Of a stretch of DNA of 64,000 nucleotides, positions 23,488 to 63,659 are shown piece by piece (the first letter of the stretch is position 1; each line of letters begins with the position of its first letter). The notes beneath the pieces were generated by a model, which was not told the DNA's origin, made no database searches, and saw only the letters and a list, made by a program, of their open reading frames with translations. The DNA is taken from IMG/VR virus record IMGVR_UViG_3300027708_000012, positions 248,001 through 312,000 of that record. One strand, 5' to 3'. Made by a program: the position numbers and the translations under genes.

Positions 23488-23515
23488 AAAAGTATGTATG
23501 CTTGTACTAAGTTGG

Positions 23516-24175: not shown

Positions 24176-24179
24176 CTAT

Positions 24180-24187
24180 TATTTATA
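24180..24187 (-). promoter_or_regulatory. T4-type late promoter
   Basis: Exact TATAAATA immediately upstream of the methyltransferase start. Confidence 0.65.
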
Positions 24188-24235
24188 AAGTGTCAGATTG
24201 TTCACCGCACAACCTGACAAAGCGGGGGTCTGTCT

Positions 24236-24311
24236 TGGTACACCCTGTTGGAATCGAACCAACTTCCACGGCTCTTCAGGCCGCCGCTATGACCACATCA
24301 GCTAAAGGTGC
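24236..24311 (-). tRNA. tRNA-Phe(GAA)
   Basis: Cloverleaf, loop CTGAAGA, CCA. Confidence 0.9.
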
Positions 24312-24316
24312 ATATT

Positions 24317-24392
24317 TGGGGTGTCTTACCGGTATCGATCCGGTACTACCGCTTTCACAGAGCAGGGTGCAGGCCACTACACTAAAGACACC
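24317..24392 (-). tRNA. tRNA-His(GTG)
   Basis: 8-bp acceptor with G-1:C73, loop CTGTGAA, T-loop ATCGATA. Confidence 0.9.
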
Positions 24393-24398
24393 ATAGAT

Positions 24399-24473
24399 TG
24401 GTACCGCCACGAGGAATCGAACCTCAATTACCAGTTCCGCAAACTAGTGTATTATCCATTATACGATAGCGAT
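24399..24473 (-). tRNA. tRNA-Arg(GCG)
   Basis: Cloverleaf, loop TTGCGGA, CCA; rare anticodon. Confidence 0.85.
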
Positions 24474-24479
24474 AAAATT

Positions 24480-24553
24480 TGGCAGGCGCACTAGGGATCG
24501 AACCTAGACTAACAGAGTCAAAGTCTGTTGTGCTACCATTACACAATGCGCCA
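24480..24553 (-). tRNA. tRNA-Gln(TTG)
   Basis: Cloverleaf, loop CTTTGAC, G73, CCA. Confidence 0.95.
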
Positions 24554-24590
24554 ATAATAAAGAATAAATATTGTTTTCTTATATTAAAAT

Positions 24591-25142
24591 ATGACAGAAA
24601 AAGTTTATAAATTAAACCTGCCTTCAATTGAAGAAATAATGCTACCTGGAAAATTTCAAGAACTTTTCCCTAGTAATATTTTTCCTAAAAATAATTCTGA
24701 AATGAGTTTGCTTGATCCAAAAACTTACCTTTTACCAGAAAATTTAAAAATTGGTCATTATGATGTTGATCATAGTATTTTATTTCATAAATCTCACGGT
24801 CAAAAAGGACTAATACATAGTGATACAAACGGTATATGGGCAATTAATTATATAGTTGGAGGGTCCGGTATTCTACATTATTATAACCCAGAAGACTTAG
24901 GTCCTCCAAATTCAAAACCAGATCCAACCGGTGTAGTTAGACCCGTTTGGGGGGATACATCAGCTTTACCCATTAAAACATATTTCATGGATCAAGGAGT
25001 GTATCTTGTTTGTACCGAGGATCCACATTTAGCTGTTGGTAATGGGAATAGGTATTCTTTAAGTATACGAGTACATCCAACACAACAGAAATCATGGCAA
25101 AGTGCTGTTGATTTTTTTCGGCCGTTCATTGAATTTTGGTAG
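24591..25142 (+). CDS. cupin / oxygenase-like hypothetical protein
   Basis: IHSD...PHLA...RYSLSIR. Confidence 0.5.
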   Translation: MTEKVYKLNLPSIEEIMLPGKFQELFPSNIFPKNNSEMSLLDPKTYLLPENLKIGHYDVDHSILFHKSHGQKGLIHSDTNGIWAINYIVGGSGILHYYNPEDLGPPNSKPDPTGVVRPVWGDTSALPIKTYFMDQGVYLVCTEDPHLAVGNGNRYSLSIRVHPTQQKSWQSAVDFFRPFIEFW

Positions 25143-25212
25143 TAACGGTCGGACTCGAACCGACGATAAACACCGTATGAAGGTGGTGCATTAGCCACTA
25201 TGCTACGTTACC
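25137..25212 (-). tRNA. tRNA-Met(CAT), probably elongator
   Basis: Acceptor GGTAACG resembles elongator Met; loop TTCATAC; Ile2 identity not excluded. Confidence 0.85.
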
Positions 25213-25453
25213 ATAAGGATAACAACTAAGATGCGCCACCATCGTTATTGGCGCCATTCACCTGTTTATACAAGGTCGACCAGGACTCGGTACGTCACTT
25301 GGGATTCATCCAGTTGATACGCCACCTGTATACCTCCACCGTTCGACGGCGATAAGTCGGGAATCGAACCCGCAACCTTTTACTACCTCGGTCCTTCGAA
25401 GAAACCTTATTAGCATGACTTCACTTGCTGACACTTAATTGTTATTCTTATGG
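25211..25453 (-). ncRNA. ~243-nt stem-enclosed RNA between tRNA-Lys and tRNA-Met
   Basis: 19/20-bp basal stem; internal T-arm-like GCGGG-UUCGAUU-CCCG. Confidence 0.55.
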
Positions 25454-25526
25454 TAGGACTGCCCGGACTCGAACCGGGAATTGACGGATTAAAAGTCCGC
25501 TGTGATTACCATTTCACCACAATCCC
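25451..25526 (-). tRNA. tRNA-Lys(TTT)
   Basis: Cloverleaf, loop CTTTTAA, CCA. Confidence 0.95.
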
Positions 25527-25530
25527 ATAT

Positions 25531-25606
25531 TGGTCCACTCAGTCGGATTCGAACCGACACCTCATTGATTAAGAGTCAAGTGCGCTACCATTAACGCTAC
25601 GAGTGG
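25531..25606 (-). tRNA. tRNA-Lys(CTT)
   Basis: Cloverleaf, loop CTCTTAA, CCA. Confidence 0.95.
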
Positions 25607-25667
25607 TTGGTCGTAATTAAATTGATTTAATGTGCCAACCAAGACCAATACGGGGTCAAGATTGACA

Positions 25668-25688
25668 CTAACGTTTAGCACGTTTCAT
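25668..25688 (-). other. minigene MKRAKR* with strong RBS
   Basis: AAAGGAGAACGAC-ATG AAA CGT GCT AAA CGT TAG. Confidence 0.45.
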
Positions 25689-25717
25689 GTCGTTCTCCTT
25701 TGAACATTAATTAAAAA

Positions 25718-25781
25718 AACAGGATGCATTTTTACTGGTTAGATTAAAAGTCTAGTGTAATAAATTTGCTGTTAGCATCCT
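25718..25781 (-). ncRNA. ACAGCAA element D (Lys-UUU anticodon-like loop)
   Basis: Stem AGGAUGC/GCAUCCU, UAACAGCAA, inner hairpin UAGA-CUUUUAA-UCUA. Confidence 0.7.
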
Positions 25782-25785
25782 AAAC

Positions 25786-25877
25786 TGGTACCCCCGGCGG
25801 GAATCGAACCCACATTAACCAATTATCTGTTGCATACGGGATATAAATCCGCTGTTTTACCATTAAACTACAGGGGC
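25786..25877 (-). tRNA. tRNA-Ile(TAT) with 22-nt variable region
   Basis: Acceptor GCCCCTG/CGGGGGT, loop TTTATAT, A31:C39 mismatch, CCA. Confidence 0.75.
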
Positions 25878-25881
25878 ATAT

Positions 25882-25956
25882 TGGTACTCCGAACGGGTTT
25901 CGATCCCGCTTCTTCGCCTTGAAAGGGCAACGTTCTAGCCAGTAAACTACCGGAGT
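25882..25956 (-). tRNA. tRNA-Glu(TTC), second copy
   Basis: Loop CTTTCAA, T-loop ATCGAAA, CCA. Confidence 0.85.
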
Positions 25957-25963
25957 ATAAAAT

Positions 25964-26038
25964 TGGTAGCCAATGATGGGAACGATCCATCGACCCTCGC
26001 CTTATCAAGACGATGCTCTACCACTGAGCTAATTGGCT
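25964..26038 (-). tRNA. tRNA-Ile(GAT)
   Basis: Loop TTGATAA, T-loop ATCGTTC, CCA. Confidence 0.9.
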
Positions 26039-26043
26039 ATAAT

Positions 26044-26119
26044 TGGTGGAGAAGAGGGGGATCGAACCCCTGACCTTCTGCTTGCAAAGCAGTTGCTCTC
26101 CCAGCTGAGCTACATCCCC
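26044..26119 (-). tRNA. tRNA-Ala(TGC)
   Basis: G3:U70, loop TTTGCAA, CCA. Confidence 0.95.
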
Positions 26120-26135
26120 AAAAGATTTTAGTGAT

Positions 26136-26807
26136 TCACCAAAAAATTATTCCACTATCATTTTGTAGATTAACATGCATTTGCATTGTTAACCTCATAT
26201 CGTTCGAATCTGATAATGAAAATGGTGCAATACTATGTACTAATTTAGATGGCCACATTGCCATCATACCTTGTGTATAACAGAATTCCTCGTCAGTATC
26301 TACCTGATAATTTCTAGGAATTTTTCCTATTGTGTTATCATATAACAATGATCCACCACTGTTTGGCAATACAATAGGAATTATAATTGATTCTAATTTT
26401 CCAGGATTTAATAAATCTTTTAATTTTGGAAATTGATCTATATGAAAATTAACATATGGAAATTTAACATTTCTGTTTCCAATATTATTTAAAAATACAT
26501 GGAATCCTGGAAATTGTAAATTAGGCGAATAATTTATAGGAATATTATAATAAGATGAAAGTTTATTTTTTATTTTATCATAATAATAAGAAAAATGTTC
26601 TAACATTATTTCGTTATTAGCCGTTATCTCTTTTTCGGAAAAATGAAAAGTATACGCTCCTGGTGGAAGTACACTAGAAAATACTGTTGGATTGATATGT
26701 TTTTCTCTTACACTTTTCCAATGAGATTTTAACATAAAAACTTTTGTTTTTATATCATCTAATTCAGATTGATCGAAAAAATTATTATCAATAACAACAG
26801 GTTTCAT
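26136..26807 (-). CDS. 2OG-Fe(II) oxygenase-like protein
   Basis: FHID...VHSI...RLTMQMH. Confidence 0.65.
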   Translation of the reverse strand: MKPVVIDNNFFDQSELDDIKTKVFMLKSHWKSVREKHINPTVFSSVLPPGAYTFHFSEKEITANNEIMLEHFSYYYDKIKNKLSSYYNIPINYSPNLQFPGFHVFLNNIGNRNVKFPYVNFHIDQFPKLKDLLNPGKLESIIIPIVLPNSGGSLLYDNTIGKIPRNYQVDTDEEFCYTQGMMAMWPSKLVHSIAPFSLSDSNDMRLTMQMHVNLQNDSGIIFW

Positions 26808-26811
26808 TTTA

Positions 26812-26819
26812 TATTTATA
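26812..26819 (-). promoter_or_regulatory. T4-type late promoter
   Basis: Exact TATAAATA just upstream of the 26807 start. Confidence 0.65.
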
Positions 26820-26820
26820 C

Positions 26821-26896
26821 TGGCTCCCCAGCGTGGGATCGAACCACGGACACCTTGATTAACAGTCAAGTGCAACTACCGCTGTGCTACTGGGGA
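26821..26896 (-). tRNA. tRNA-Asn(GTT)
   Basis: Cloverleaf, loop CTGTTAA, G73, CCA. Confidence 0.95.
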
Positions 26897-27556
26897 ATAA
26901 AATTTGTTCTTTTTACTTATGACTAGGCGACTTGGCCAGTCTACAGTTTTGTTATATAAATTCATTGTTGTTGAGTTTATACTTACAATACTAAGATACG
27001 GATCTATTGATGACACAATGTCTTCAACAGATAATTGATGTGGTATGATACTTAAATTTAAAGCAGACAATTTTAATAATGTGTCAGTTGACATACTTTT
27101 AAAGTCTCTTCCTGAAATGCTTAACCAAATACCGTTAGGTCTAAGCACTCTAGATACAGATTTAGCAAATGCATGTCTTAGAGAACTATCTAAATCGTAT
27201 GTATGAAAACAGCCTCGATCTACTACGTAGTCAAAACTATTTTCTTCAAAACTATTTTTTAAAATATCAGTTGCTTGCAATTTAATTTTTGCATTTTCTT
27301 TTTTAGAAAGAGCAGAAATAATTGCTACATCAGATATATCTATTGCTGTTACATCTAATCCTCTTTGTTGTAACCAAACAGCATTTACAGGATCAGCGCC
27401 GCAACCTAATTCAAGTACAGTACCGCTAACTATATTTTGTTTAGAAAACCAATCTACAATATTGTGATCTACATCACCTTCCCAAGGATGGCTGGATGCA
27501 TTTGCAAAAATGCTATTCCATTTTTCTGTATTTTCTAAATTATTGTAGTTTGTCAT
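26876..27556 (-). CDS. class I SAM-dependent methyltransferase (TPMT/TehB-like)
   Basis: VLELGCG, IDIS, FDYVVDRGCFH, LRPNG. Confidence 0.85.
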   Translation of the reverse strand: MTNYNNLENTEKWNSIFANASSHPWEGDVDHNIVDWFSKQNIVSGTVLELGCGADPVNAVWLQQRGLDVTAIDISDVAIISALSKKENAKIKLQATDILKNSFEENSFDYVVDRGCFHTYDLDSSLRHAFAKSVSRVLRPNGIWLSISGRDFKSMSTDTLLKLSALNLSIIPHQLSVEDIVSSIDPYLSIVSINSTTMNLYNKTVDWPSRLVISKKNKFYSPVAQR

Positions 27557-27569
27557 TTTTCACTCAATT

Positions 27570-27644
27570 TGGCGGCTCCAAGGGGAATCGAACCCCTATT
27601 AATGGCGTGACAAGCCACCGTACTAACCATTATACTATGAAGCC
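27570..27644 (-). tRNA. tRNA-Asp(GTC)
   Basis: Cloverleaf, loop TTGTCAC, G73, CCA. Confidence 0.95.
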
Positions 27645-27651
27645 TAAAACT

Positions 27652-27737
27652 TGGTGGAGTATCCTGGGATCGAACCAGGCGTGCCATTACGACGGCGGAT
27701 TTACAGTCCACTGCATCACCATTGATGCTTCTACTCC
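27652..27737 (-). tRNA. tRNA-Tyr(GTA)
   Basis: Long variable arm, loop CTGTAAA, CCA. Confidence 0.9.
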
Positions 27738-35048: not shown

Positions 35049-35055
35049 CCATAAA

Positions 35056-35078
35056 GAAACCCGCCGAAGCGGGTTCTA
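35056..35078 (-). terminator. intrinsic terminator after tmRNA
   Basis: AACCCGC-UUCG-GCGGGUU followed by a U-rich tail. Confidence 0.8.
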
Positions 35079-35079
35079 C

Positions 35080-35455
35080 TATTTTTGGTGACAAAGCATA
35101 GTTGCTTCGCGAGGGCAGTTTTTTAGGCTGCTAATGCAAATTCTGCATCATTGGCAGAAGCCAATGTTACTGGAACTTGAAAATACTCGAATGTAGATGT
35201 TTTAGCATTTACTTTAATTTGCTTGATTTACAGTCATCGCCTACTGAGTTGCCGTCTTCAATATCTAACCCCGTCGAAACCATGGCAGGCCCATCATAAA
35301 CACACTCAAATCTGAAAGGTGTCGCCTGTGACGCCTTGTGTTTATAACACCACCACTCGGGACTCAAACCCGCATGTGTTTATGGTGGACCTGGCGGGAG
35401 TCGAACCCGCGTCCGAGATTCCTTCTATCCAAAGGAATTACAACTATTTCATTTA
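35080..35455 (-). ncRNA. ssrA: circularly permuted two-piece tmRNA
   Basis: Acceptor piece ending GGUUCGACUCCCGCCAGGUCCACCA (35383), hairpin spacer, coding piece starting GGGCCUG (35292) with G3:U70; tag frame 35123-35206 ends ANDAEFALAA*. Confidence 0.9.
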
Positions 35456-35461
35456 ACCCAA

Positions 35462-35665
35462 TTACTTGGGTTGAATATTTGCTGCCTGCAAGCCTTTTTG
35501 ACCTTGTACCACATCAAATGTCACTGATTGATTCTCTTGCAGAACTTTGAATCCTGATGTTTGAATCGCTGAGTAGTGTGCGAAAAGATCCTCGCCGCCG
35601 CCGTCTGGAGTAATAAACCCAAAACCTTTGGTTTCATTAAACCATTTTACTTTACCTGTTGCCAT
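35462..35665 (-). CDS. cspA: cold-shock protein
   Basis: [21 protein letters not shown]. Confidence 0.95.
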
Positions 35666-50953: not shown

Positions 50954-51649
50954 TTATGCTATTTCAGGGAACAAGCAATCCTGTATGAAAACCTGTACAT
51001 CCTCTTCACTAAGCCCTAAGCTAACCATAACTTTAGGAGTATGTGGGTTTTTCTTCTGATTCTCACAATAGTAATTCTGAGCGTCAGTAGTATTAGGATG
51101 TGTACGTTCGGTTTCTTTTACTGTGGCCAAATAGTGTGTTAGATTCTTACGGGCCATGGCAAGTATTTGCTCTAGTTCTGCTTCATCGCTGACATTTCCC
51201 GCGGCCACCATAGAACCTGTAAAAATACGCTCTGCCCAATCTGGTAACTTGCGAGTTTTATTCCACTCTAGACGACGAGCTTCTTCAGCAAACCAATCAA
51301 TCATCGGATGTTCGCTGTCGCCTGCAGGACTAAAATCATGGAAACAGCCTGTGATTTTATTTTTACCAGCTACAACATCAAATCCAAAGATAGGTGCAGG
51401 GTTATCTGTATGCGGGAAAATACAGCAATGCATCATCCATAGACCTTTAGTCTCGCGGGCATCAACTACATCAATATGAGCCCTACGATAAGCACTACTT
51501 GTCCAAACTTTGTTTACCCAACCTGGTTGATTAAAACGTTCCATACCAGGCTCTTGAATAATACTACCAGTTGCATACAACTGACTTTCAAAGTATTCTT
51601 CAATTTTAATTAGTGTGTCCCAGACATTACTCATCTTTATACTCGACAA
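50954..51649 (-). CDS. ferredoxin-dependent bilin reductase (PcyA/PcyX-like)
   Basis: RRAHIDVVD, HCCIFP..APIFGFD, FHDFSP; adjacent to heme oxygenase. Confidence 0.85.
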   Translation of the reverse strand: MSSIKMSNVWDTLIKIEEYFESQLYATGSIIQEPGMERFNQPGWVNKVWTSSAYRRAHIDVVDARETKGLWMMHCCIFPHTDNPAPIFGFDVVAGKNKITGCFHDFSPAGDSEHPMIDWFAEEARRLEWNKTRKLPDWAERIFTGSMVAAGNVSDEAELEQILAMARKNLTHYLATVKETERTHPNTTDAQNYYCENQKKNPHTPKVMVSLGLSEEDVQVFIQDCLFPEIA

Positions 51650-52175
51650 TTTCCATCATTTGTTGGAAGAACCTTGTGGCGAAATCAAAACATACTTTAG
51701 CTTCGTCTGCCATGTCGTCGCTTATACGTTCTCTAATAGCTGCCTTAAGTGCTTCAGGATCTTCAAATTGGTACATGGTGCCCGACCCAGGAACACGTTT
51801 GGCAATCATCTGTCCACCAGCTAGATCACCCATGTGTCGCACATATAAGTGCGCCATTAGTTTTTTTGGATTATCTCTGATACTCATGATATAATCCATA
51901 TATTCTTGGACTATAGGAAGTAGTTCTGCATCGTCCTCATCTGTCCATAGTTCTTTATAGTCCGCATTAATTTTTGGTGCTCTGCGAATATCAGGCATGC
52001 CGGCCAGCATACCGGTTGCCATAGCACACACTTCTAGTATCTCATATTGCGGATGTTGATTTTTTAAATAAGTTGCATACAGTTTAGGATTTATTGTGCC
52101 TGAAAACAAAATTTTTACAAATTCCTGTCTTTCAGCATTGGTATGCGCTTCTTTAGTTAAATCTCGTAAGCTCAT
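51627..52175 (-). CDS. heme oxygenase
   Basis: LTKEAH proximal His, AHLYVRHMGDLAGGQ. Confidence 0.9.
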   Translation of the reverse strand: MSLRDLTKEAHTNAERQEFVKILFSGTINPKLYATYLKNQHPQYEILEVCAMATGMLAGMPDIRRAPKINADYKELWTDEDDAELLPIVQEYMDYIMSIRDNPKKLMAHLYVRHMGDLAGGQMIAKRVPGSGTMYQFEDPEALKAAIRERISDDMADEAKVCFDFATRFFQQMMEIVEYKDE

Positions 52176-52474
52176 TCTTCCTCCAATTTAATTTGGAGAG
52201 GAAAATTATTTTCTCTAGCTGTAGATGTTGTTTCTACGGCCTTAGCCTCGGCAATTTCAAAACTATAAATTCCCGCTACTCCACTTCCAGTCTCGTGAAT
52301 TTGAAGCATAATGTCTCTGGCCGAATCAGTTGAATGCCTAAAGATATTGGATAAAATTGATATCACAAACTCCATCGGGGTTACATCGTCATTAAGTATA
52401 ATGACCTTCCAACGTTTTGGTTCACTGATTACTACTTTAATTTTCTCGTCAATTGCGATATCTGTACTTGACAT
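52172..52474 (-). CDS. clpS: ClpS adaptor
   Basis: KVIILNDDVTPMEFV, MLQIHETGSGVAG. Confidence 0.95.
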   Translation of the reverse strand: MSSTDIAIDEKIKVVISEPKRWKVIILNDDVTPMEFVISILSNIFRHSTDSARDIMLQIHETGSGVAGIYSFEIAEAKAVETTSTARENNFPLQIKLEEE

Positions 52475-52516
52475 TGTGTTCTCTTTAAAAAAGGGGGAGT
52501 TGCCTCCCCCGGTTGA

Positions 52517-52948
52517 TTATTTAACTGTAATGATACGTGGCTTCAGTGATTCTGGTACAATACGTTCAATCCTAATGATTAACATACCGTCCTTTACTTC
52601 AGCGTCTTTGATTTCCATGTACTCAGCAAGAGTCCATGTCTGTTCAAAGTTACGGCTAGCAAGACCTCGATGTAAATACTCTTTGTCTTCTGCTGAAATA
52701 TCAGTTTGCATACCGCGAACAACTAATTGATCTTGGTCTACTTCAACTGTAATTTGATCTTTGCTGAAACCTGCTACAGCTACTTCAATTGCATAATCTG
52801 TGTCACTATATTTTACAATATTATGTGGCGGATAATTATTTGATTGTTGCTGTAATCTTTGATTAAAGATTTGATCAAATCCAACTAAAGCTCTACTTAG
52901 TTGTGCAAAGTCCGCTGGACTCACTGTTTTTAATTGCATTGTTGCCAT
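52517..52948 (-). CDS. small heat-shock protein Hsp20 (IbpA-like)
   Basis: YPPHNI, EVAVAGF, YLHRGLASRNF, DGML. Confidence 0.95.
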   Translation of the reverse strand: MATMQLKTVSPADFAQLSRALVGFDQIFNQRLQQQSNNYPPHNIVKYSDTDYAIEVAVAGFSKDQITVEVDQDQLVVRGMQTDISAEDKEYLHRGLASRNFEQTWTLAEYMEIKDAEVKDGMLIIRIERIVPESLKPRIITVK

Positions 52949-52954
52949 TTTTTA

Positions 52955-53002
52955 TCTCCTTATATTAAGCAAGAATGTATGGGGCCCCATAATGGGCACC
53001 CC
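52955..53002 (-). promoter_or_regulatory. ROSE-like RNA thermometer upstream of hsp20
   Basis: UCUUGCUU pairs with SD AAGGAGA with a bulged G; preceded by a GC hairpin. Confidence 0.65.
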
Positions 53003-53016
53003 ATGTTTGTATTATA

Positions 53017-54924
53017 TTACTTTTTGTCAGTAGGGTCAACCTCTGTGAAAGCCGCATTAACTGACTGGCCTTCTTCAGGTTGTACTGGTGCTGATTGCGC
53101 TGCACTTTCTGCAGCTTGCTTCTTGGCCATAACTGGACCTGCTGCCTCAAAAAATGTTTCAACTGATTTTTGAATAACATCTTTGTCGTCCCCTGCGCAA
53201 GCAGTTTCTACTGCTTTAACAGCATCGTCAAACTTAGTCTTTTCTTCTTCAGTCAATTGATCTTTGTATGTATCATAGTCTTTCTTGATACTGTGTGTAG
53301 TACCTTCAGCATTGTTACGTGCTGTGATTAATTCTGCTTGTTTCTTATCTGCTTCGGCATTTTCCTCAGCTTCTTGAACCATGCGTTTGATCTCAGCTTC
53401 TGTCAATCCGCTATCTGACTTGATAGTGATTTTGTTTTCTTTGCCGGTCTTTTTATCCCTGGCACTTACATTTAAAATACCGTTTGCATCGATATCTAAT
53501 GTAACTTCAATCTGTGGCATGCCACGTGGTGCAGGATCAATACCTTCCAAGTTAAACTCGCCAAGCGATTTATTGTACTTGAATAAGTCACGTTCGCCCT
53601 GAGCAACCTTAATAGTTACTGCTGGCTGATTGTCATCTGCTGTACTAAATGTTTGGCTATGTTTGGTCGGGATAGTTGTGTTTTTAGCAATCAGCTTGGT
53701 AAACACACCGCCCATTGTTTCAATACCTAGTGTCAATGGAGTAACGTCCAACAACAATACGTCTGTCTTGTCGCCAGCTAGAACAGCGCCTTGTACTGCG
53801 GCACCAGCGGCAACTGCTTCGTCTGGGTTAACGTCTTTACGTGGAGCCTTACCAAACAGTTTCTCAACTGCTTCTTGTACTTTAGGCATACGTGTTTGAC
53901 CACCAACTAGAATAACTTCGTCGATGTCTGCGGCGCTAACTTTAGCATCTGCCATAGCAACTTTACATGGCTCAATTGAACGCTGGATCAGTCCGTCTAC
54001 CATTGCTTCAAACTTAGCACGGCTGATAGTTACATTCATGTGCTTAGGACCGTTTGCATCTGCTGTAATGTAAGGCAAGTTAACACTTGTACTTGCGGCT
54101 GTAGATAATTCAATCTTGGCTTTTTCAGCAGACTCTTTCAAACGTTGTAATGCAAGAACGTCTTGCTTCAAATCAACTCCGTTGTCTTTCTTGAACTCGT
54201 CTACCAAATAGTCCATGATAGCTTGGTCAAAGTCTTCACCGCCTAGGAATGTATCGCCGTTTGTTGACAATACTTCAATTTGCTTGTCGCCATCAATGTT
54301 AGCGATTTCAATGATTGAAATATCAAATGTACCACCACCCAAGTCATAGACTGCAATCTTGCGATCTTTCTTGTCTGCTTTGTCAACACCATAAGCCAAT
54401 GCGGCCGCTGTCGGCTCGTTGATAATACGTAGAACTTCTAAGCCTGCAATACGTCCGGCATCTTTAGTAGCTTGACGCTGGCTATCGTTGAAGTAAGCTG
54501 GAACTGTAATAACAGCTTGGGTCACTGTTGTACCTAAATAGTCTTCAGCAGTTTTTTTCATTTTGCGAAGTACTTCAGCTGATACTTGCTGTGGTGCAAG
54601 TTTTTCGCCGTTTGCTTCGATCCAAGCATCACCGTTGTCTGCTTTAATAATGCTGTAGGGCATCAAGTCAATATCTTTTTGCACAGCAGCTTCGTCAAAC
54701 TTGCGACCAATAAGGCGCTTGCTGGCGTAAATTGTATTTTTTGGGTTTGTGACTGCTTGTCGTTTTGCTGTTGCACCAACTAGGATTTCGTCCTTTGTAT
54801 ATGCAATGATTGATGGTGTTGTTCTTGCGCCTTCGCTATTTTCAATAACTTTTGCTACTCCATTTTCTAGGATAGCTACGCAACTGTTTGTTGTACCTAA
54901 ATCGATACCGATGATTTTACTCAT
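53017..54924 (-). CDS. dnaK: Hsp70 chaperone DnaK
   Basis: [26 protein letters not shown], full length. Confidence 0.98.
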
Positions 54925-54929
54925 AATTT

Positions 54930-54998
54930 TCTCCTTTAATTAAGCGAGTAATGCGGGCACCATGCCCTTGTACTAAACCCTTACGGCGTTTCAGCACG
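54930..54998 (-). promoter_or_regulatory. ROSE-like RNA thermometer upstream of dnaK
   Basis: CUCGCUU pairs with AAGGAG with a bulged G; two upstream hairpins. Confidence 0.6.
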
Positions 54999-55014
54999 TA
55001 ATTATTTATGTCTG

Positions 55015-55296
55015 TCAAACAGTTTCTTTGAAAATATTTGACCAGATTTTTAGTTTTTCTCGCTTGGCTTCTGCCGCTTGTTCAATGTTGGTCCAGCTAA
55101 CTACATCTAGTTCTTGCAGGATTTCAATCATAGCATACAAGTCGCCCAATTCTTCTTCCAAGTGTTCCCTATTAGTTTTGGGTTTACCTGGCTTAAGATT
55201 GTCTAGGCCAAAGCGACTAATCTTACTTACCGCTTGAATAACTTCTGCACATTCTTCTTGGAGAATGTCCATTACTTCTTTAGTTTGTGAATCCAT
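55015..55296 (-). CDS. MazG-like nucleotide pyrophosphohydrolase
   Basis: EECAE...EEELGD acidic motif. Confidence 0.7.
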   Translation of the reverse strand: MDSQTKEVMDILQEECAEVIQAVSKISRFGLDNLKPGKPKTNREHLEEELGDLYAMIEILQELDVVSWTNIEQAAEAKREKLKIWSNIFKETV

Positions 55297-55298
55297 AA

Positions 55299-55883
55299 TT
55301 ACCTCTGATTTGCAAACGGAGCAATATAAGTACCTCCGCTAGTTGTACTTGTTCTTAGTGTGTTATAGACATTTTGAATGCCTACCGCCTGGTTCCACGC
55401 ATCCTCTAAAGCATGGTGGGCCGTTACCGGTGGACGTTGTGGGTTGATTCCTAAATCAAACGCTGTACGCACATCACGCACTTCCCAAAATTTCCAAGGA
55501 ATAGCTCTATTGATTTTACGGAATACATGTTCACAAATGATAATATCAAAACAACTGCCATTTGACCATACACGTTTAGCACCCCAGCAAAATTTATAAA
55601 GACGAGCAAATGCTTCTTCAATATCAATTCTATCTTCGGGGTCAAAGGCAGCTTCCTGTGCCTCTTTGCTTTGATTAGCCCACCAAGCGATTGTGTCATC
55701 GTTAGTGGTCAATCCAATCCTATCACAACTATCTAAATCTACTTTACAGTAAAAACTATCCATATCTGGTTCTTTTAATTCGGAACCAAACGGATCAAAT
55801 TTTACTGCTCCTATTGTTAAAATTGAAGCATCTGGAGTAGTATTAAGTGTCTCCAAATCTATCATTATATCTGTTTTAGCCAT
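55299..55883 (-). CDS. DEDD 3'-5' exonuclease (Rv2179c-like)
   Basis: IDLET, WSNGSCFD, RDVRT, HHALED. Confidence 0.85.
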   Translation of the reverse strand: MAKTDIMIDLETLNTTPDASILTIGAVKFDPFGSELKEPDMDSFYCKVDLDSCDRIGLTTNDDTIAWWANQSKEAQEAAFDPEDRIDIEEAFARLYKFCWGAKRVWSNGSCFDIIICEHVFRKINRAIPWKFWEVRDVRTAFDLGINPQRPPVTAHHALEDAWNQAVGIQNVYNTLRTSTTSGGTYIAPFANQR

Positions 55884-55910
55884 TAAGTTCTTTCTTTATT
55901 GTGAACTTAT

Positions 55911-55939
55911 ATTATAACAGATTTACTATATAATGTCAA
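55911..55939 (-). promoter_or_regulatory. sigma70 promoter
   Basis: TTGACA-17-TATAAT. Confidence 0.75.
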
Positions 55940-56169
55940 TAGAGTTTTGGTGGAAGTTGTTGATCACGTAGTTTTTTATTCCAACGACTTTTGGCTGCAC
56001 CCTTTTTACGTTTGCGTTCAGTCGTTGGTTTTTCGTAAAACTCTTTGGCACGTAAAGCATCTAGTGTACCTGCTTCTTCAACCTTACGTTTAAATCTTCG
56101 AAGAGAAACGTTGATATTTTCCCCGTCTTTGACAGTAATACCAGTTCCCTTACTCTTCTTGTGAATCAT
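55936..56169 (-). CDS. rpsU: ribosomal protein bS21
   Basis: LRRFKRKVE...[14 protein letters not shown]; start at MIHKK. Confidence 0.9.
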
Positions 56170-56587
56170 TATCGTTTTCCTCGTCTTCGTCTTGGTTCTC
56201 CAATTGTTCAACAATCAAATCAAGATTATAAATTCGATTTTTACTAATTAGACCGTATGGAGTTATTTCGTCGCTAGTTATGTAGCTTGCATTAGGTTGG
56301 GCAATAATAAAAGTAACAAATTTTTGTGTAATGCTGTCACAGTTATCCACATCTACTATTACACAATCTGCTTGTTGGCATATACTTAAAAGCCAACCAA
56401 TATCATTATCATCAGTGTCATAGATAAAAACATTTAAATCATCGATGCTTTTACTTAAAATTGTTTGAAATTGTTCTTTAACTGATGTACTAGGTTTAAT
56501 TAGTAGATAACTCAAGTTCATATTAAACAGTTTATCAGGAGGCGTTATTAATGTTATTTTTCCTAAGTTCATATATCTTTTCTGCAA
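56150..56587 (-). CDS. hypothetical protein
   Basis: 145-aa ORF with acidic tail. Confidence 0.7.
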
Positions 56588-60177: not shown

Positions 60178-60504
60178 TTATACTCGAAAACTTTCACCGC
60201 AACCGCAACGGTCACGTTCATTTGGATTGATAAAATCAAATCCTTCATTGAGTCCATTGCGGACCCAGTCCATTGTTAGTCCGTTTAAGTAGACAAATGA
60301 CTTTTCATCTACTAATACTACAAAATCATTTTGAGCAAAGTTGATTACTCCAACTTCATGTTCGTAGCTGTCTACATATTCTAGAACATATGCTAATCCG
60401 CTACATCCAGTGGTTCTAACACCTATGCGTATTCCAACGCCTTTACCACGACGTTCTAAAGTTTGTTTAATTTTTTTACTTGCCGTGTTGGTTATATTAA
60501 TCAT
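60178..60504 (-). CDS. iscA: Fe-S cluster A-type carrier
   Basis: GCSGLAY, CGCGESF. Confidence 0.95.
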   Translation of the reverse strand: MINITNTASKKIKQTLERRGKGVGIRIGVRTTGCSGLAYVLEYVDSYEHEVGVINFAQNDFVVLVDEKSFVYLNGLTMDWVRNGLNEGFDFINPNERDRCGCGESFRV

Positions 60505-61642
60505 TTATTAAATTATTTAATCTTGGATATAAATCTAAGTTTCCTAAATTTAATTTTAAATTCCAATATTCCCACATTGCATATTGAATTTCAAATGCAG
60601 GGACACTTGGATCAATAATTTTTAATAACTCTCTAAACTTAGGATCTTCTGCTTTTGATAATATATGATTGTATGCCGATAGTCTAGCATGTTTCCAAAA
60701 TGCAGTATTATATTTGTTTGAACTAAAATAATGCAATAAAATTATTGTTTCAATTTCTGAAACTAGTTGGAGGAAATAATTATTAACCGCCTCAACCGGG
60801 ACATTATTATTCCATTGATCATAGGCAAGTTGCTGAACTTTAGTAGAAAGCCATAATGGAGTAGTTTCCATAGGTTCTAAAAACATACTTGCACTACCAT
60901 TGTATACTATTCGTTTAGTAAAATTTTCTTTACGAAAGTAATTTTTCCAAGAAAATGTGCCAGTGTTCTCGCTAGGTATTAATTGGTATTCTTCAAAGAC
61001 ATTAACAACATCGTCTTTGATGTCATCGACATTATTAATATCTGTATTATATACATACCCAACAGCACACCTGTTTTGCAACGGTACACAAAACACCCAC
61101 CCGTATGGTCTAGCAATAGTCAGTGTTTCATTAAACTTAGGGTAATCCCAGTAACACTGAGTTATATAAGCGCCGTTTACTGGGATTGAACTAGTAGTCG
61201 AATAATCATCAAAATTTGTTGGCCTGCCTGAACAATCAATTACAAAGTCAGAATCTATATCTTCATTTGCAATATTTTTATCAATAAGTTTTATTCTTGG
61301 ATTAGTCGATGCATAGTTAACTATATATTCTTGTAGTTTAACAGCATTAAAATGATATCCTACAGCAGGTGGTGCAAAATAATTTAAAATAGGTTTTTCT
61401 GAAAACCCAATTTTTTTAACACCTGTTTTAAAAGTACCATCTATTAAATGCAAATCACTATGTGTAAATCCAAATAAATCGTGAAGCTGTTGTGTAAATC
61501 CAACAAAGCCGCCTTCACCTACTGGTTGCGGCTTTATATTGCTGTCAAAGTACCAGTCTATTTCCCAATCGGTGTATTTTAGAAAATGTCCCACATTCAT
61601 GCAACCTGCGGTGCCTTTTCCAACTATGGCTAATTTTTTCAT
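60497..61642 (-). CDS. tryptophan-halogenase-like flavoprotein
   Basis: VGKGTAG, VGEG, IDCSG, GWVFCVPL, FLEPME. Confidence 0.8.
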   Translation of the reverse strand: MKKLAIVGKGTAGCMNVGHFLKYTDWEIDWYFDSNIKPQPVGEGGFVGFTQQLHDLFGFTHSDLHLIDGTFKTGVKKIGFSEKPILNYFAPPAVGYHFNAVKLQEYIVNYASTNPRIKLIDKNIANEDIDSDFVIDCSGRPTNFDDYSTTSSIPVNGAYITQCYWDYPKFNETLTIARPYGWVFCVPLQNRCAVGYVYNTDINNVDDIKDDVVNVFEEYQLIPSENTGTFSWKNYFRKENFTKRIVYNGSASMFLEPMETTPLWLSTKVQQLAYDQWNNNVPVEAVNNYFLQLVSEIETIILLHYFSSNKYNTAFWKHARLSAYNHILSKAEDPKFRELLKIIDPSVPAFEIQYAMWEYWNLKLNLGNLDLYPRLNNLIND

Positions 61643-62019
61643 TTGTGTTTTTCTTTATAGTCTGCTATTGCAGCTTTGATAGCATCTTCTGCTAGAATTG
61701 AACAATGTATCTTTACAGGCGGGAGTGCAAGCTCTTCTGCGATCTGGGAGTTTTTAAGGTTAACAGCATCATTAATATGCATACCCTTAACCCACTCTGT
61801 AACCAACGACGAACTGGCGATTGCTGAACCGCATCCATATGTCTTGAAACGAGCATCTCTAATAATACCATCTTTGTCTACCTTTATTTGTAGTTTCATT
61901 ACATCACCGCAGGCTGGTGCTCCAACCATTCCAGTTCCTATACCATCTTCATCTTTGGCAAAAGAACCTACATTTCGGGGATTTTCGTAATGATCTATTA
62001 CCTTGTCTGAATATGCCAT
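61639..62019 (-). CDS. iscU: Fe-S scaffold protein
   Basis: HYENPRNVG, APACGD, YGCGSAIA, KIHCS. Confidence 0.97.
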   Translation of the reverse strand: MAYSDKVIDHYENPRNVGSFAKDEDGIGTGMVGAPACGDVMKLQIKVDKDGIIRDARFKTYGCGSAIASSSLVTEWVKGMHINDAVNLKNSQIAEELALPPVKIHCSILAEDAIKAAIADYKEKHK

Positions 62020-62024
62020 TGTAA

Positions 62025-63659
62025 TTAACCTTTTGTTATTAATTTATTTACCTCGGGGAGATAAAGGTATTTAATTCCTGATCTCCTCAAAGTGCTTAAT
62101 GCATCATCAATTGTTTCTACTAAGGGTTCTCCTCCTAAATTAAAACTAGTATTAAATAAAATTGGAACACCAGTTTGATTATTAAACTCAGTTATCAAAT
62201 TATAAAAATGAAAATTTTGTTCAATATTAATTGTTTGTACTCGACACGTATTATCCACATGTACAATGCTTGGTATTTGATTTTTCTTATTTTCTAAAAC
62301 ATTCACAGCATACATCATAAATGGACTGTTAGACGTGTTACGCATATCAAACCATTCGTGTACATGCTCTTCTAATACAGTTCCGGCAAACGGCCTGTAC
62401 CATTCTCTTCCTTTTACACGATTAACAATGTCTTTACCTTGTTGTACTCTAGGGTCGAACAAAATACTACGATTGCCTAATGCACGAGGTCCAGCTTCTG
62501 AACCTCCTTGAAATATAGCTACTATATTTTCAGAAACTAATAGATTAACAATGTCCGAGTAACTAACTGTTTGCTCAGTTTCATTTGATTCTAATTTATA
62601 ATTGTAACTAGGAGTTGGACCTAGACAAAAAGATAATTGTTTATTTGGAGTCGTATTATTAGTAGTACTATAATAAGCCAGTTTAGCTATACCTATACTT
62701 TGCCCCCCATCGTGCGCAGGAGGGTCTATGAATACATTAACGTCTTTAGGAATGTGTTTTAAATATTCATAATTAGCTACACAATTTAATGCATAGCCGC
62801 CTGATATTACTAAATTTTTAGAATTGGATAATTTAAGTGCGGTTAAAATTAAATCAGTGGCTACTGATTGAGTAGATTGCTGTACAGCATAACAAAGATT
62901 GGCCGCATCATATTGTTCTACTTCGTCAAGGAATGGCGCAGCATACATTGCTGTATTAGGCCTAAACAACTGTTTGTTAGGTGTTTTTTTACCGTTAACA
63001 GTTACATATATTTGTGGAATAGTTTCATCGTTCTTTCCGTACGAACTTAATCCCATTGCCTTGCCGCACTCTAAATTTGTATGCCCTAAAGCAATACTTA
63101 GTGCAGAGTATATACTGGCAATACCTTGCTCATTAGCAAAGACTTTTTCTTCGTGAAACTTAGTAAGTTGATTATAGTTATTTCCAAACTTTTTATATAT
63201 AGATGTAAATGTTTTTGGAAATTTTGCTAGATATATGCTTTCAACTTCGTATCCGGCTTTGCCAGCTTGGTCTAATTCGATATATTTTCCAGCAGCATCT
63301 ATAACTACACATACCGCTTGGTCAAAACCAGAACTATAAAATCCACTGGTTGCATGATATAGATGATGCTCACCATTATTAAACACTTGCCTGTGATTGT
63401 CAATTAATCCAAGTTTTAAGGCAAATTTAATAAACGGGCCTGCTTCATTTGTAGTATCTGATGACCCTACAGATATGGCTAGACAATCTACTTTATTCGT
63501 GTATTCAAGAACTTTAAGTAGTCCTAAGAATGGACTATCGTCGTATTTTTTTCGACTTAGTCTTTCTTCTTCTACATAAAAAACAATATTACCATTTTTA
63601 AGTAAACAAGTAGATGCGTTATGCCCTGTACTTATACCTACAATCCAGTTGTCACGCAT
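62025..63659 (-). CDS. carbamoyltransferase (NodU/CmcH family)
   Basis: EEERLSRKK, EHHLYHA, GGYALNC, GPRALGNRS, NTSFN. Confidence 0.9.
   Translation of the reverse strand: MRDNWIVGISTGHNASTCLLKNGNIVFYVEEERLSRKKYDDSPFLGLLKVLEYTNKVDCLAISVGSSDTTNEAGPFIKFALKLGLIDNHRQVFNNGEHHLYHATSGFYSSGFDQAVCVVIDAAGKYIELDQAGKAGYEVESIYLAKFPKTFTSIYKKFGNNYNQLTKFHEEKVFANEQGIASIYSALSIALGHTNLECGKAMGLSSYGKNDETIPQIYVTVNGKKTPNKQLFRPNTAMYAAPFLDEVEQYDAANLCYAVQQSTQSVATDLILTALKLSNSKNLVISGGYALNCVANYEYLKHIPKDVNVFIDPPAHDGGQSIGIAKLAYYSTTNNTTPNKQLSFCLGPTPSYNYKLESNETEQTVSYSDIVNLLVSENIVAIFQGGSEAGPRALGNRSILFDPRVQQGKDIVNRVKGREWYRPFAGTVLEEHVHEWFDMRNTSNSPFMMYAVNVLENKKNQIPSIVHVDNTCRVQTINIEQNFHFYNLITEFNNQTGVPILFNTSFNLGGEPLVETIDDALSTLRRSGIKYLYLPEVNKLITKG

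What the first reader, a model, noticed from the sequence alone, without database searches (positions are those of the whole stretch)
54925..55000. Second ROSE-like thermometer on phage dnaK
Seen: CUCGCUU-AAUUA-AAGGAG with the same bulged G, plus two upstream hairpins. ROSE elements are known mainly from small heat-shock genes, so one on dnaK is unusual. Inference: the phage controls its chaperones by RNA thermosensing rather than sigma32.
Basis: partly seen in the sequence, partly recalled or inferred. Interest (0 to 1): 0.6.

Follow-up and report, generated by a model that had tools for sequence, protein, structure and literature searches.

The report
ROSE-like RNA leader on phage dnaK
A 345-kb T4-like freshwater phage has put the same heat-shock RNA leader found before small heat-shock genes in front of its own Hsp70 (dnaK) gene, a gene class on which this leader has not been reported, which suggests the phage gates translation of two of its chaperones at the RNA level; this has not been tested at the bench.

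Summary
On the minus strand, 54948-54931 reads CUCGCUU-AAUUA-AAGGAG, with G54945 unpaired, six bases before the dnaK AUG. Two hairpins lie upstream of it. In the whole 345-kb genome the motif occurs only before dnaK and before the next gene, an IbpA-like hsp20.

All 80 related viral contigs (DnaK 77-93% identical) keep YUY(G/A)CUU-loop-AAGGAG, while loop, spacer and linker vary.

A covariance model built only from hsp20 leaders finds the dnaK leaders. It also finds the ibpA-type leaders of SAR11 and of Burkholderiales-labelled genome bins, the hsp20 leaders of cultured cyanophages and a pelagiphage, and, weakly, E. coli ibpA. So this is a copy of a short ROSE-like sHSP leader moved onto dnaK.

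Neither gene has a sigma32-type promoter. dnaK has a T4-late-like ATAAATA and hsp20 has TTGACC-17-TATAAT.

Not shown:
- Temperature response was not tested.
- Rfam ROSE models stay far below their thresholds.
- Thermodynamic folding is ambiguous. In dnaK the anti-SD can instead pair with AUGAGUAA.

A live rival or complement is feedback by the phage sHSP, which keeps the IbpA residues R93 and Y34 needed for binding its own mRNA.

Verdict: a new variant of a known kind, moderately interesting.

The parts
53017..54924 (-). dnaK (Hsp70), 635 aa
   Evidence: Pfam HSP70 E 5e-255. NCBIfam DnaK 962.8 bits, above its cut-off.
55003..55010 (-). CATAAATA, a T4-late-type promoter-like element. The inferred transcript start is about 54997.
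   Evidence: ATAAATA occurs 72 times in the genome. 54 of these lie within 120 nt upstream of an ORF start, against 5.6 expected. 59 of 60 relatives have it 62-91 nt before the dnaK ATG. The genome encodes a T4 gp23-type capsid protein. The start site is inferred, not mapped.
54970..54997 (-). Leader hairpin I (GUGCUGAAACGCC-GUAA-GGGUUUAGUAC)
   Evidence: Present in every predicted fold from 5 to 50 C. The homologous hairpin in hsp20 leaders has compensatory changes in 8 of 9 pairs, with 0 of 500 shuffles reaching the observed covariation score. RNAalifold also predicts it in single-hairpin dnaK leaders.
54955..54967 (-). Leader hairpin II (GGGCA-UGG-UGCCC), an extra hairpin found in only some relatives
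   Evidence: Predicted folds. Present in about a third of the relatives' dnaK leaders and absent from the rest.
54942..54948 (-). Anti-SD CUCGCUU, holding the ROSE motif UCGCU, with unpaired G54945
   Evidence: Read directly from the sequence. The motif is kept as YUY(G/A)CUU in all 80 related loci, one of them cut short.
54931..54936 (-). Shine-Dalgarno AAGGAG, the 3' arm of the SD hairpin; the loop AAUUA lies at 54937-54941
   Evidence: The loop varies from 3 to 7 nt in length and in sequence among relatives, while both arms stay fixed.
54917..54928 (-). Start codon region. AAUUA (54928-54924) and UGAGUAA (54923-54917) form the rival partner of the anti-SD segment.
   Evidence: Minimum-energy fold at 37 C. 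The anti-SD:start duplex averages -6.4 kcal/mol in dnaK leaders and -2.2 in hsp20 leaders. RNAalifold picks GCUUA/UGAGC in single-hairpin dnaK leaders, but those pairs never vary.
53011..53039 (-). Sigma70-type promoter TTGACC-17-TATAAT for hsp20, inside the 3' end of dnaK
   Evidence: 11 of 12 matches, the best site in the region. A TATAAT-like hexamer is present in 51 of 56 relatives.
52949..53004 (-). hsp20 leader, the sister element: hairpin I at 53004-52979, then CUUGCUU-AAUAU-AAGGAG at 52973-52956
   Evidence: Rfam ROSE_2 26.5 bits, E 0.0075, full model length, below threshold. Model R1 scores 79.4 bits.
52517..52948 (-). IbpA-like small heat shock protein (Hsp20), 143 aa
   Evidence: Pfam HSP20. 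The best NCBIfam match is IbpA at 111.6 bits, below the equivalog cut-off. It is 35% identical to E. coli IbpA, and the equivalents of R93 and Y34 are conserved.
52493..52510 (-). Intrinsic terminator-like hairpin followed by a T run, after hsp20
   Evidence: RNA-library contigs lie on 52523-54927.

Best explanation
The dnaK leader is a cis-acting element of the short ROSE-like type that blocks the ribosome binding site. It is a paralogue of the leader of the neighbouring ibpA-like hsp20 gene.

Proposed mechanism:
1. dnaK mRNA starts just after a T4-late-type ATAAATA promoter.
2. Its roughly 73-nt 5' UTR folds into two stable upstream hairpins and a weak, A-U-rich 3' hairpin. In that hairpin CUCGCUU, with G54945 unpaired, covers the Shine-Dalgarno AAGGAG.
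3. In dnaK the same anti-SD segment can alternatively pair with the start codon region.
4. At low ambient temperature the ribosome binding site is occluded. Warming melts the weak helix, and titration of a bound sHSP may do the same, so that translation can begin.
5. DnaK and the sHSP are therefore made on demand, without the host's sigma32.

Shown: the anatomy, its conservation, its homology to sHSP leaders, and the promoter types.
Inferred: the transcript start, the fold actually adopted, and the response to temperature.
For: - The motif is present and unique.
- All 80 related loci keep the anti-SD and the SD, while loop length (3-7 nt), spacer and linker vary.
- The only variation in the anti-SD arm opposite the SD is C/U opposite G (C-G or U-G), both of which can pair.
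- Model R1, built from hsp20 leaders alone, hits the window's dnaK leader at 29.2 bits, E 4e-4 for the whole genome. It hits the relatives' dnaK leaders at 20-60 bits, and nothing else in the 345-kb genome is significant.
- R1 also hits leaders of ibpA-type genes in SAR11 and in Burkholderiales-labelled bins at 20-57 bits, and the E. coli ibpA thermometer over its full length at 12.5 bits.
- The upstream hairpin shows strong covariation.
- The predicted probability that GGAG is paired falls from 0.85 at 5 C to 0.25 at 37 C.
- No sigma32-like promoter appears in 60 dnaK and 56 hsp20 upstream regions.
- In four lake metatranscriptome runs, contigs lie on hsp20 and dnaK but not on the 1.2 kb upstream.
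- The defining features of ROSE-like elements are taken from PMC3669281 and PMC4152365.
Against: - No experiment supports the mechanism.
- The Rfam ROSE models are far below threshold. They find nothing at E<=1 in eight relatives searched together.
- The SD arm cannot covary, so the SD helix has no compensatory support.
- ViennaRNA and RNAalifold often prefer pairing of the anti-SD with the start codon region.
- The same folding assay fails to reproduce the behaviour of the validated E. coli ibpA thermometer, so it cannot settle the question either way.
- Measured on a -60..+20 stretch, predicted SD pairing ranks low among the genome's genes.
- The RNA contigs are assemblies. They show neither strand, nor 5' end, nor expression level.
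Confidence: 0.6

Rival explanations
1. The leader is mainly an operator for the phage's own IbpA-like sHSP, working as an aggregation sensor. Free Hsp20 oligomers bind the structured leaders of both hsp20 and dnaK mRNA and repress translation. When unfolded proteins, for example a late flood of virion proteins, draw the sHSP away, both mRNAs are derepressed. Temperature would then be secondary. This can coexist with thermosensing, as it does in E. coli ibpA.
For: - E. coli IbpA represses ibpA, ibpB and rpoH translation by binding their structured 5' UTRs. Titration by aggregates relieves the repression (bioRxiv 10.1101/2020.04.20.050740; PMC10410725).
- mRNA binding needs R93, and translational repression also needs an aromatic residue at position 34 (PMC10474464).
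- The equivalents of both residues are conserved in all phage Hsp20s aligned, while IbpB, which lacks the activity, has Q and F there.
- The two leaders are homologous and are the only two copies in the genome, as expected for a shared operator.
- In phages L076 and L081 the unpaired G is an A in both leaders at once.
Against: - No binding data exist.
- The RNA features that IbpA recognises are not defined in the cited papers, so recognition cannot be tested from sequence.
- The phage protein is only 35-41% identical to IbpA and lacks R97 and K98.
Confidence: 0.3
2. The working structure in dnaK is not the SD hairpin. It is a longer helix between the anti-SD segment and the start codon region: UUACUCG/UGAGUAA plus UAAUU/AAUUA. 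This leaves the SD in a loop and hides the AUG. The element would still occlude the ribosome binding site, but by a different geometry from canonical ROSE.
For: - It is the minimum-energy fold at 37 C, -23.1 kcal/mol, z -2.2.
- RNAalifold predicts GCUUA/UGAGC in 40 single-hairpin dnaK leaders.
- The anti-SD:start duplex is at or below -5 kcal/mol in 82% of dnaK leaders.
- CUCGCUU goes with codon AGU in 7 of 7 cases, and CUUGCUU goes with AGC in 47 of 48. Each combination keeps a 7-bp helix in its own register.
- On the gene tree, 4 of 6 independent contrasts go the same way and none goes the other way.
Against: - The sign test gives p 0.125. The two sites lie 27 nt apart, so a recombined leader block would give the same pattern.
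- The pairs predicted by RNAalifold never vary.
- hsp20 leaders keep the same anti-SD without any conserved complement at their start codons: mean -2.2 kcal/mol, 5% at or below -5. The SD pairing is therefore the feature the two leaders share.
Confidence: 0.3
3. There is no regulation. The upstream hairpins only stabilise the 5' end of the mRNA, and the conserved UYGCUU is kept for another reason, such as a processing site or a translational enhancer.
For: - The SD helix is predicted to be only marginally stable.
- One RNA-library contig ends at 54927 followed by adapter sequence. This could be an RNA end, but it is a single record.
Against: The same motif, in the same position opposite the SD, recurs before ibpA-type genes in distant bacteria and phages, where ROSE-like elements have been shown to regulate (PMC3669281). 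In this genome it occurs only before two chaperone genes.
Confidence: 0.08

Closest known systems
Short ROSE-like RNA thermometers of Pseudomonas ibpA (PMC3669281)
   Same: - A short 5' UTR (61-62 nt there; about 55 nt for hsp20 and about 73 nt for dnaK here).
- A conserved upstream hairpin.
- The SD in the 3' hairpin, imperfectly paired to U(U/C)GCU.
- An unpaired G.
- The loop is variable while the stems are conserved.
   Different: - The gene is dnaK, not an sHSP gene.
- The carrier is a phage.
- The promoter is T4-late-like instead of sigma32-type.
- The SD helix is richer in A-U (CUU/AAG).
- dnaK has a competing helix with its start codon.
- There is no experimental test.
E. coli ibpA thermometer, Rfam ROSE_2 (RF01832), and its IbpA-mediated feedback
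   Same: - The same order of parts, and the same UCUCGCU anti-SD with a 4-5 nt loop before AGGAG.
- The neighbouring phage sHSP is IbpA-like and keeps R93 and Y34.
   Different: - It scores 19 bits against a threshold of 65.
- E. coli has three hairpins of different sequence.
- In E. coli the known mRNA targets of IbpA are ibpA, ibpB and rpoH, not dnaK.
Leaders of ibpA-type genes in SAR11 (Pelagibacterales) and in Burkholderiales-labelled genome bins, found here
   Same: Hairpin I with a GCC...GGG core, then ACUUGCUUA-loop-AAGGAGG. R1 scores 20-57 bits.
   Different: - The SAR11 copies sit behind sigma32-like CTTGAAA...CCCATAT promoters.
- In the three cellular genomes where R1 found anything, every hit lay before an ibpA-type gene.
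hsp20 leaders of cultured T4-like cyanophages (S-CRM01, S-SKS1, S-RIM2, P-HM2, S-SSM7) and pelagiphage HTVC115P, found here
   Same: A phage setting, an IbpA-like hsp20, and a hairpin followed by ACUCGCUU-loop-AAGGAG. R1 scores 17.8-31.5 bits.
   Different: Those phages have the leader on hsp20 only. No dnaK copy is known in them.
Phage lambda cIII RNA thermometer (PMC4166951)
   Same: A phage mRNA whose translation depends on temperature through RNA structure.
   Different: It is a two-state switch that is open at low temperature and closed at 45 C. It is unrelated in sequence and has the opposite logic.

Membership tests
ROSE-like RNA thermometers | Lies in the 5' UTR of a heat shock gene | tested here: met
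   It lies between a promoter-like ATAAATA and the dnaK AUG. The transcript start is inferred.
ROSE-like RNA thermometers | [quoted passage not shown] | tested here: not met
   The downstream gene is dnaK. The sister copy, on hsp20, does meet this feature.
ROSE-like RNA thermometers | Two to four hairpins, with the SD in the 3'-proximal one | tested here: inconclusive
   Three hairpins are predicted at 20-30 C or below, depending on the stretch folded. At 37 C the third hairpin is replaced by a helix with the start codon. The upstream hairpin is supported by covariation in the sister leaders.
ROSE-like RNA thermometers | Conserved U(U/C)GCU anti-SD opposite the SD (PMC3669281) | tested here: met
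   UCGCU lies at 54947-54943. In all but one lineage of the 80 relatives the motif is UCGCU or UUGCU. L076 and L081 have UCACU in dnaK and UUACU in hsp20.
ROSE-like RNA thermometers | Unpaired (bulged) G within the anti-SD (PMC4152365) | tested here: met
   G54945 has no partner when CUC/GAG and CUU/AAG pair. The position is G in 59 of 61 distinct dnaK leaders.
ROSE-like RNA thermometers | Reaches the Rfam gathering score of ROSE, ROSE_2 or ROSE_3 | tested here: not met
   ROSE_2 scores 19 bits against 65, and ROSE_3 scores 16.4 against 43. There is no hit at gathering thresholds, and none at E<=1 in eight relatives.
ROSE-like RNA thermometers | Sequence and structure homology to an accepted ROSE-like sHSP leader | tested here: met
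   R1, built from hsp20 leaders, hits the dnaK leader at 29.2 bits, E 4e-4. It also hits E. coli ibpA over its full length, weakly, at 12.5 bits.
ROSE-like RNA thermometers | Translation rises with temperature through melting of the SD helix | not testable with these tools
   Only a thermodynamic model is available, and it fails on the validated E. coli element.
IbpA-bound autoregulatory 5' UTRs | A cognate IbpA with R93 and an aromatic residue at position 34 (PMC10474464) | tested here: met
   Both residues are conserved in the window's Hsp20 and in 7 relatives aligned with E. coli IbpA and IbpB.
IbpA-bound autoregulatory 5' UTRs | The sHSP binds the leader RNA and represses its translation | not testable with these tools
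   No tool here models protein-RNA binding.
fourU thermometers | A run of four U paired with AGGA of the SD | tested here: not met
   The strand opposite the SD is CUCGCUU.
T4-type late promoters (TATAAATA) | The motif lies upstream of genes, in a phage with T4-type morphogenesis genes | tested here: met
   CATAAATA lies at 55010-55003. ATAAATA is enriched about tenfold upstream of ORFs. A gp23-type capsid gene is present. A gp55-type sigma factor was not looked for.

The most novel reading that the evidence does not exclude
This lineage of T4-like jumbo phages has built a two-gene proteostasis unit that works after transcription and is independent of the host heat-shock sigma factor. One ROSE-like leader was duplicated from the ibpA-like gene onto dnaK. 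Both mRNAs are read out by temperature and by the phage's own IbpA-like protein, which would act as an aggregation sensor. If so, this would be the first Hsp70 gene under ROSE/IbpA-type translational control and the first virus-encoded sensor of this kind. ROSE-like leaders would also be a common, overlooked feature of hsp20 genes in marine and freshwater T4-like phages.
Probability: 0.3. Interest if true: 0.8.

Novelty: new variant of a known kind. Interest (0 to 1): 0.62.

Why it matters
ROSE-type thermometers are textbook regulators of small heat-shock genes in alpha- and gamma-proteobacteria. The major chaperones are thought to be controlled at transcription.

Here the same leader sits on an Hsp70 gene, in a virus, behind phage and housekeeping-type promoters instead of sigma32. 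It is conserved across at least 80 environmental phage contigs.

This would show how a phage can make chaperone synthesis depend on temperature or protein-folding stress without the host's heat-shock regulon. It also points to an unreported class of RNA regulators on the hsp20 genes of cultured cyanophages, where the idea can be tested directly. Finally, it offers naturally low-melting thermometer variants from cold and temperate lakes.

Tried and rejected
- **Rfam.** At gathering thresholds it finds only tRNAs and a tmRNA in the window. ROSE hits appear only in very small search spaces and below threshold. Nothing appears in eight relatives searched together. Rfam membership is therefore not claimed.
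- **freshwater-2 RNA (RF02980).** It matched both leaders weakly, at 21 and 15 bits, mostly through AAGGAGAAAA...AUG. I rejected it as the identity of the element.
- **SD accessibility ranking.** I ranked dnaK and hsp20 among 170 SD-bearing ORFs of the genome by predicted SD pairing. They ranked low. The assay depends on the stretch folded, and it also mis-predicts the validated E. coli element, so it gives no verdict.
- **Covariation between the anti-SD variant and codon 2.** Four of six independent contrasts went the same way, p 0.125, and linkage cannot be excluded.
- **Chance sigma70 -35.** TTGACA at 55018-55013 has no properly spaced -10 and is not conserved in relatives.
- **Other genes with the leader.** The weak R1 hits elsewhere in the genome (13-19 bits) have no UYGCU and precede unrelated genes.
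- **Identifying the phage among sequenced isolates.** There is no near DNA match. The DnaK hits in isolate 'phage' records at 66-70% identity carry names and annotation that point to bacterial DNA. The host remains unknown. The DnaK and the IbpA-like protein look proteobacterial, and the tmRNA matches the beta-proteobacterial and permuted models.
- **'Moraphages'.** These are large aquatic phages with DnaK/DnaJ and predicted Bacteroidota hosts (PMC12619734). Nothing ties this genome to them.
- **RNA-library contigs.** They could not give a transcript start.
- **Literature.** Searches found no report of ROSE-like elements on phage genes or on dnaK. The library lacks most subscription journals, so absence is not proven.

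Full report
**1. What is at the coordinates**

The window is bases 248001-312000 of a 345,369-bp viral record with 38% G+C. The gene next to the finding is a full-length DnaK on the minus strand, 53017-54924 (Pfam HSP70 E 5e-255; NCBIfam DnaK 962.8 bits). A MazG-like ORF (55015-55296) lies upstream of it. Downstream lie an Hsp20 (52517-52948), ClpS and a heme oxygenase.

Read on the minus strand, the 90-nt gap between mazG and dnaK holds these parts:
- CAUAAAUA, 55010-55003
- a long hairpin, 54997-54970
- GGGCAUGGUGCCC, 54967-54955
- CUCGCUU, 54948-54942
- AAUUA
- AAGGAG, 54936-54931
- AAAAUU
- AUG, 54924-54922

**2. More than chance**

The exact pattern occurs once in the window and in none of 100 shuffles. 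Across the whole genome, a looser pattern (YTYGCT, gap, AGGAG, gap, start codon) precedes only two real genes, dnaK and hsp20. The hsp20 leader reads CUUGCUU-AAUAU-AAGGAG behind a G+C-rich hairpin.

**3. Conservation**

A scan of viral contigs with the DnaK protein returned 80 loci with DnaK 77-93% identical, some on contigs of 356 and 383 kb. All 80, one of them cut short, keep YUY(G/A)CUU, a loop, and AAGGAG before the dnaK start.

Among 61 distinct leaders the anti-SD and the SD are invariant or nearly so. The loop varies (3-7 nt, several sequences), and so do the SD-AUG spacer and the linker to the upstream hairpin.

In 73 of the 80 loci, hsp20 follows dnaK with its own copy of the element. 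In 57 distinct hsp20 leaders the upstream hairpin has compensatory changes in 8 of 9 pairs, and 0 of 500 shuffles reach the observed covariation score. The SD helix is paired in 97.7% of cells but cannot covary, because the SD is fixed. Its only arm variation is C/U opposite G.

**4. The two leaders are homologous, and both belong with sHSP leaders**

I built covariance model R1 from the hsp20 leaders alone. Its hits were:
- The relatives' dnaK leaders at 20-60 bits.
- The window's dnaK leader (54974-54913) at 29.2 bits. E is 6e-4 in a 523-kb search and 4e-4 in the phage's own genome, where nothing else is significant. The weak remaining hits lack the motif and precede unrelated genes.
- The leaders of most cellular ibpA-type genes examined, at 20-57 bits.
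- The validated E. coli ibpA thermometer over its full length, though only at 12.5 bits, and the ibpB leader.
- The hsp20 leaders of all six cultured phages checked: S-CRM01, S-SKS1, S-RIM2, P-HM2, S-SSM7 and pelagiphage HTVC115P, at 17.8-31.5 bits.

The Hsp20 is IbpA-like. IbpA is its best NCBIfam match (111.6 bits over the full length), and it is 35% identical to E. coli IbpA.

A scan of one genome per prokaryote species with an Hsp20 alignment gave 63 loci at 25-46% identity. Most are Pelagibacterales, with several bins labelled Burkholderiaceae, Rubrivivax or Polynucleobacter. The SAR11 copies read: sigma32-like CTTGAAAA...CCCATAT, then a hairpin, then ACUUGCUUAACAAAGGAGG.

In the three whole cellular genomes where R1 found anything, every hit lay before an ibpA-type gene.

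**5. Comparison with the definition of ROSE-like elements**

The literature defines short ROSE-like thermometers as follows:
- two hairpins, with the SD in the second one, imperfectly paired to the conserved U(U/C)GCU (PMC3669281);
- a bulged G in that motif, whose deletion abolishes heat induction in related elements (PMC4152365).

The dnaK leader meets these sequence features. It fails two tests. The gene is not an sHSP gene, and the Rfam ROSE models stay far below threshold: ROSE_2 at 19 bits against 65 and ROSE_3 at 16.4 against 43 in a 126-nt search, with nothing in 60 kb of relatives.

I therefore file it as working like a ROSE-like element and homologous to sHSP leaders of that type, but not as a member of the curated Rfam families.

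**6. Which fold?**

ViennaRNA places the SD hairpin in the minimum-energy structure only at 30 C or below with a 110-nt leader, and at 20 C or below with a 91-nt leader. Above that, UUACUCG pairs with UGAGUAA and UAAUU with AAUUA. This hides the AUG and leaves the SD in a loop.

The predicted probability that GGAG is paired falls from 0.85 at 5 C to 0.46 at 25 C and 0.25 at 37 C. That range would suit a lake organism. However, the same calculation gives the wrong trend for the validated E. coli ibpA element, so I do not lean on it.

The start-codon helix is strong in dnaK leaders (mean -6.4 kcal/mol) and absent from hsp20 leaders (mean -2.2 kcal/mol). The SD pairing is thus the feature common to both leaders, and the AUG helix is a dnaK-specific extra or competitor.

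The anti-SD variant and the wobble base of codon 2 change together: CUCGCUU with AGU, CUUGCUU with AGC. On the gene tree, 4 of 6 independent contrasts agree and none disagrees (p 0.125). The sites are 27 nt apart, so transfer of a recombined leader block would give the same result.

**7. Promoters and the sigma32 claim**

- ATAAATA occurs 72 times in the genome. 54 of these lie within 120 nt upstream of an ORF, against 5.6 expected.
- The genome encodes a T4 gp23-type capsid protein.
- 59 of 60 dnaK leaders have ATAAATA 62-91 nt before the ATG, much farther than most other copies in the genome, which lie under 40 nt from their ORF start. The structured leader fills that gap.
- hsp20 has TTGACC-17-TATAAT inside the end of dnaK (53039-53011), the best sigma70-type site in the region. 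A terminator-like hairpin follows at 52510-52493.
- No sigma32-like promoter was found in any of the 116 phage upstream regions, unlike the SAR11 homologues.

'Its chaperones' means two genes only. A DnaJ-like gene elsewhere has no such leader, and no GrpE or GroEL was found.

**8. Expression**

Four lake metatranscriptome runs from four studies hold contigs, several of them identical to the window, across 52523-54927. They hold none on 55074-56237 and little downstream of the terminator. One contig spans the dnaK-hsp20 junction.

This argues against plain DNA carry-over and for a well-transcribed dnaK-hsp20 unit. Contigs, however, give no strand, no 5' end and no expression level. The leader itself (54928-55000) is barely covered.

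**9. A second mechanism that must be considered**

E. coli IbpA binds the structured 5' UTRs of ibpA, ibpB and rpoH mRNA and represses their translation. Protein aggregates titrate it away (bioRxiv 10.1101/2020.04.20.050740; PMC10410725). mRNA binding needs R93, and repression also needs an aromatic residue at position 34; IbpB lacks the activity (PMC10474464).

Aligned with the real E. coli sequences, the window's Hsp20 and seven relatives keep both residues. IbpB has Q and F there.

Two homologous leaders next to the gene of an IbpA-like protein are what a shared operator would look like. In two phages (L076, L081) the unpaired G is an A in both leaders. This fits joint tuning, but it does not tell the models apart.

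**10. Verdict**

The most likely reading is a ROSE-like leader that occludes the ribosome binding site, copied from the phage's ibpA-like gene onto dnaK, and opened by warmth, by loss of bound sHSP, or by both.

I found no report of such an element on dnaK or on any phage gene in the searchable literature. One review states that ROSE is always associated with small heat-shock genes (PMC4166951), and another paper states that other Hsps are controlled only at transcription (bioRxiv 10.1101/2020.04.20.050740).

It is a new variant of a known kind, and it can be tested with simple reporters.

Noticed in passing
window 52949-53004 (-): The hsp20 leader is the sister ROSE-like element: a hairpin followed by CUUGCUU-AAUAU-AAGGAG. 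It gives the best Rfam ROSE_2 hit in the region (26.5 bits, below threshold). The protein is IbpA-like.
   Followed up: yes
L153-L158 (Pelagibacter phage HTVC115P, S-SKS1, S-SSM7, S-RIM2, P-HM2, S-CRM01): The hsp20 genes of cultured T4-like cyanophages and of a pelagiphage carry the same kind of leader: a hairpin followed by ACUCGCUU-loop-AAGGAG. I found no paper describing this.
   Followed up: partly
L094, L102, L106, L108-L110, L114, L116 and other Pelagibacterales loci, just upstream of the sHSP gene: SAR11 ibpA-type genes have a sigma32-like CTTGAAAA...CCCATAT promoter followed by the same two-hairpin ROSE-like leader. There the anti-SD region can also pair with AUGAGUAAUGCUUU.
   Followed up: partly
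L076 and L081, dnaK and hsp20 leaders: In this one phage lineage the unpaired G of the anti-SD is an A in both leaders at once (CUCACUU and CUUACUU).
   Followed up: no
window 13028-27737 (-) and 35055-35497 (-): The window holds an array of about 30 tRNA genes and a permuted (two-piece) tmRNA. The tmRNA matches the beta-proteobacterial model at 106 bits and the permuted model at 126 bits.
   Followed up: no
whole genome G000; e.g. upstream of a 499-aa ORF whose N-terminus recalls tail sheath proteins (not checked by a family scan), near G000:39229: ATAAATA (the T4-late-type TATAAATA) is about tenfold enriched just upstream of ORFs. The genome has a T4 gp23-type capsid gene at G000:88979-89956.
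   Followed up: partly
G000:C1:184717 (-), outside the window: A DnaJ-like gene (289 aa) sits behind a TTGACA-17-TATAAT promoter and has no ROSE-like leader. No GrpE or GroEL was found in the genome.
   Followed up: partly
L092, L098, L130, L138, L141, L142, L144, L147, L149 (contigs of MAGs labelled Fischerella, Polynucleobacter, Rhodobacteraceae, Planctomycetaceae, Flavobacteriaceae and others): These sHSP loci have GTATAAATA-type promoters like T4-like phages. Several are short contigs. They may be phage contigs binned into bacterial MAGs.
   Followed up: no
L157 (Prochlorococcus phage P-HM2), hsp20: The annotated start (locus 335) lies upstream of the SD/AUG that the leader model aligns (about locus 403-405). 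The annotated start may be too early.
   Followed up: no
window 54927: One metatranscriptome contig (run X9) ends at 54927, three bases before the AUG, and is followed by Illumina adapter sequence. It is a single record and is not interpreted.
   Followed up: no
window 51627-52474, 55015-55883, 60497-63659: Neighbouring genes include ClpS, a heme oxygenase, a MazG-like protein, an Rv2179c-like 3'-5' exoribonuclease, a tryptophan-halogenase-like protein and a carbamoyltransferase. This is an auxiliary gene set reminiscent of cyanophages, although the DnaK and the IbpA-like protein look proteobacterial.
   Followed up: no
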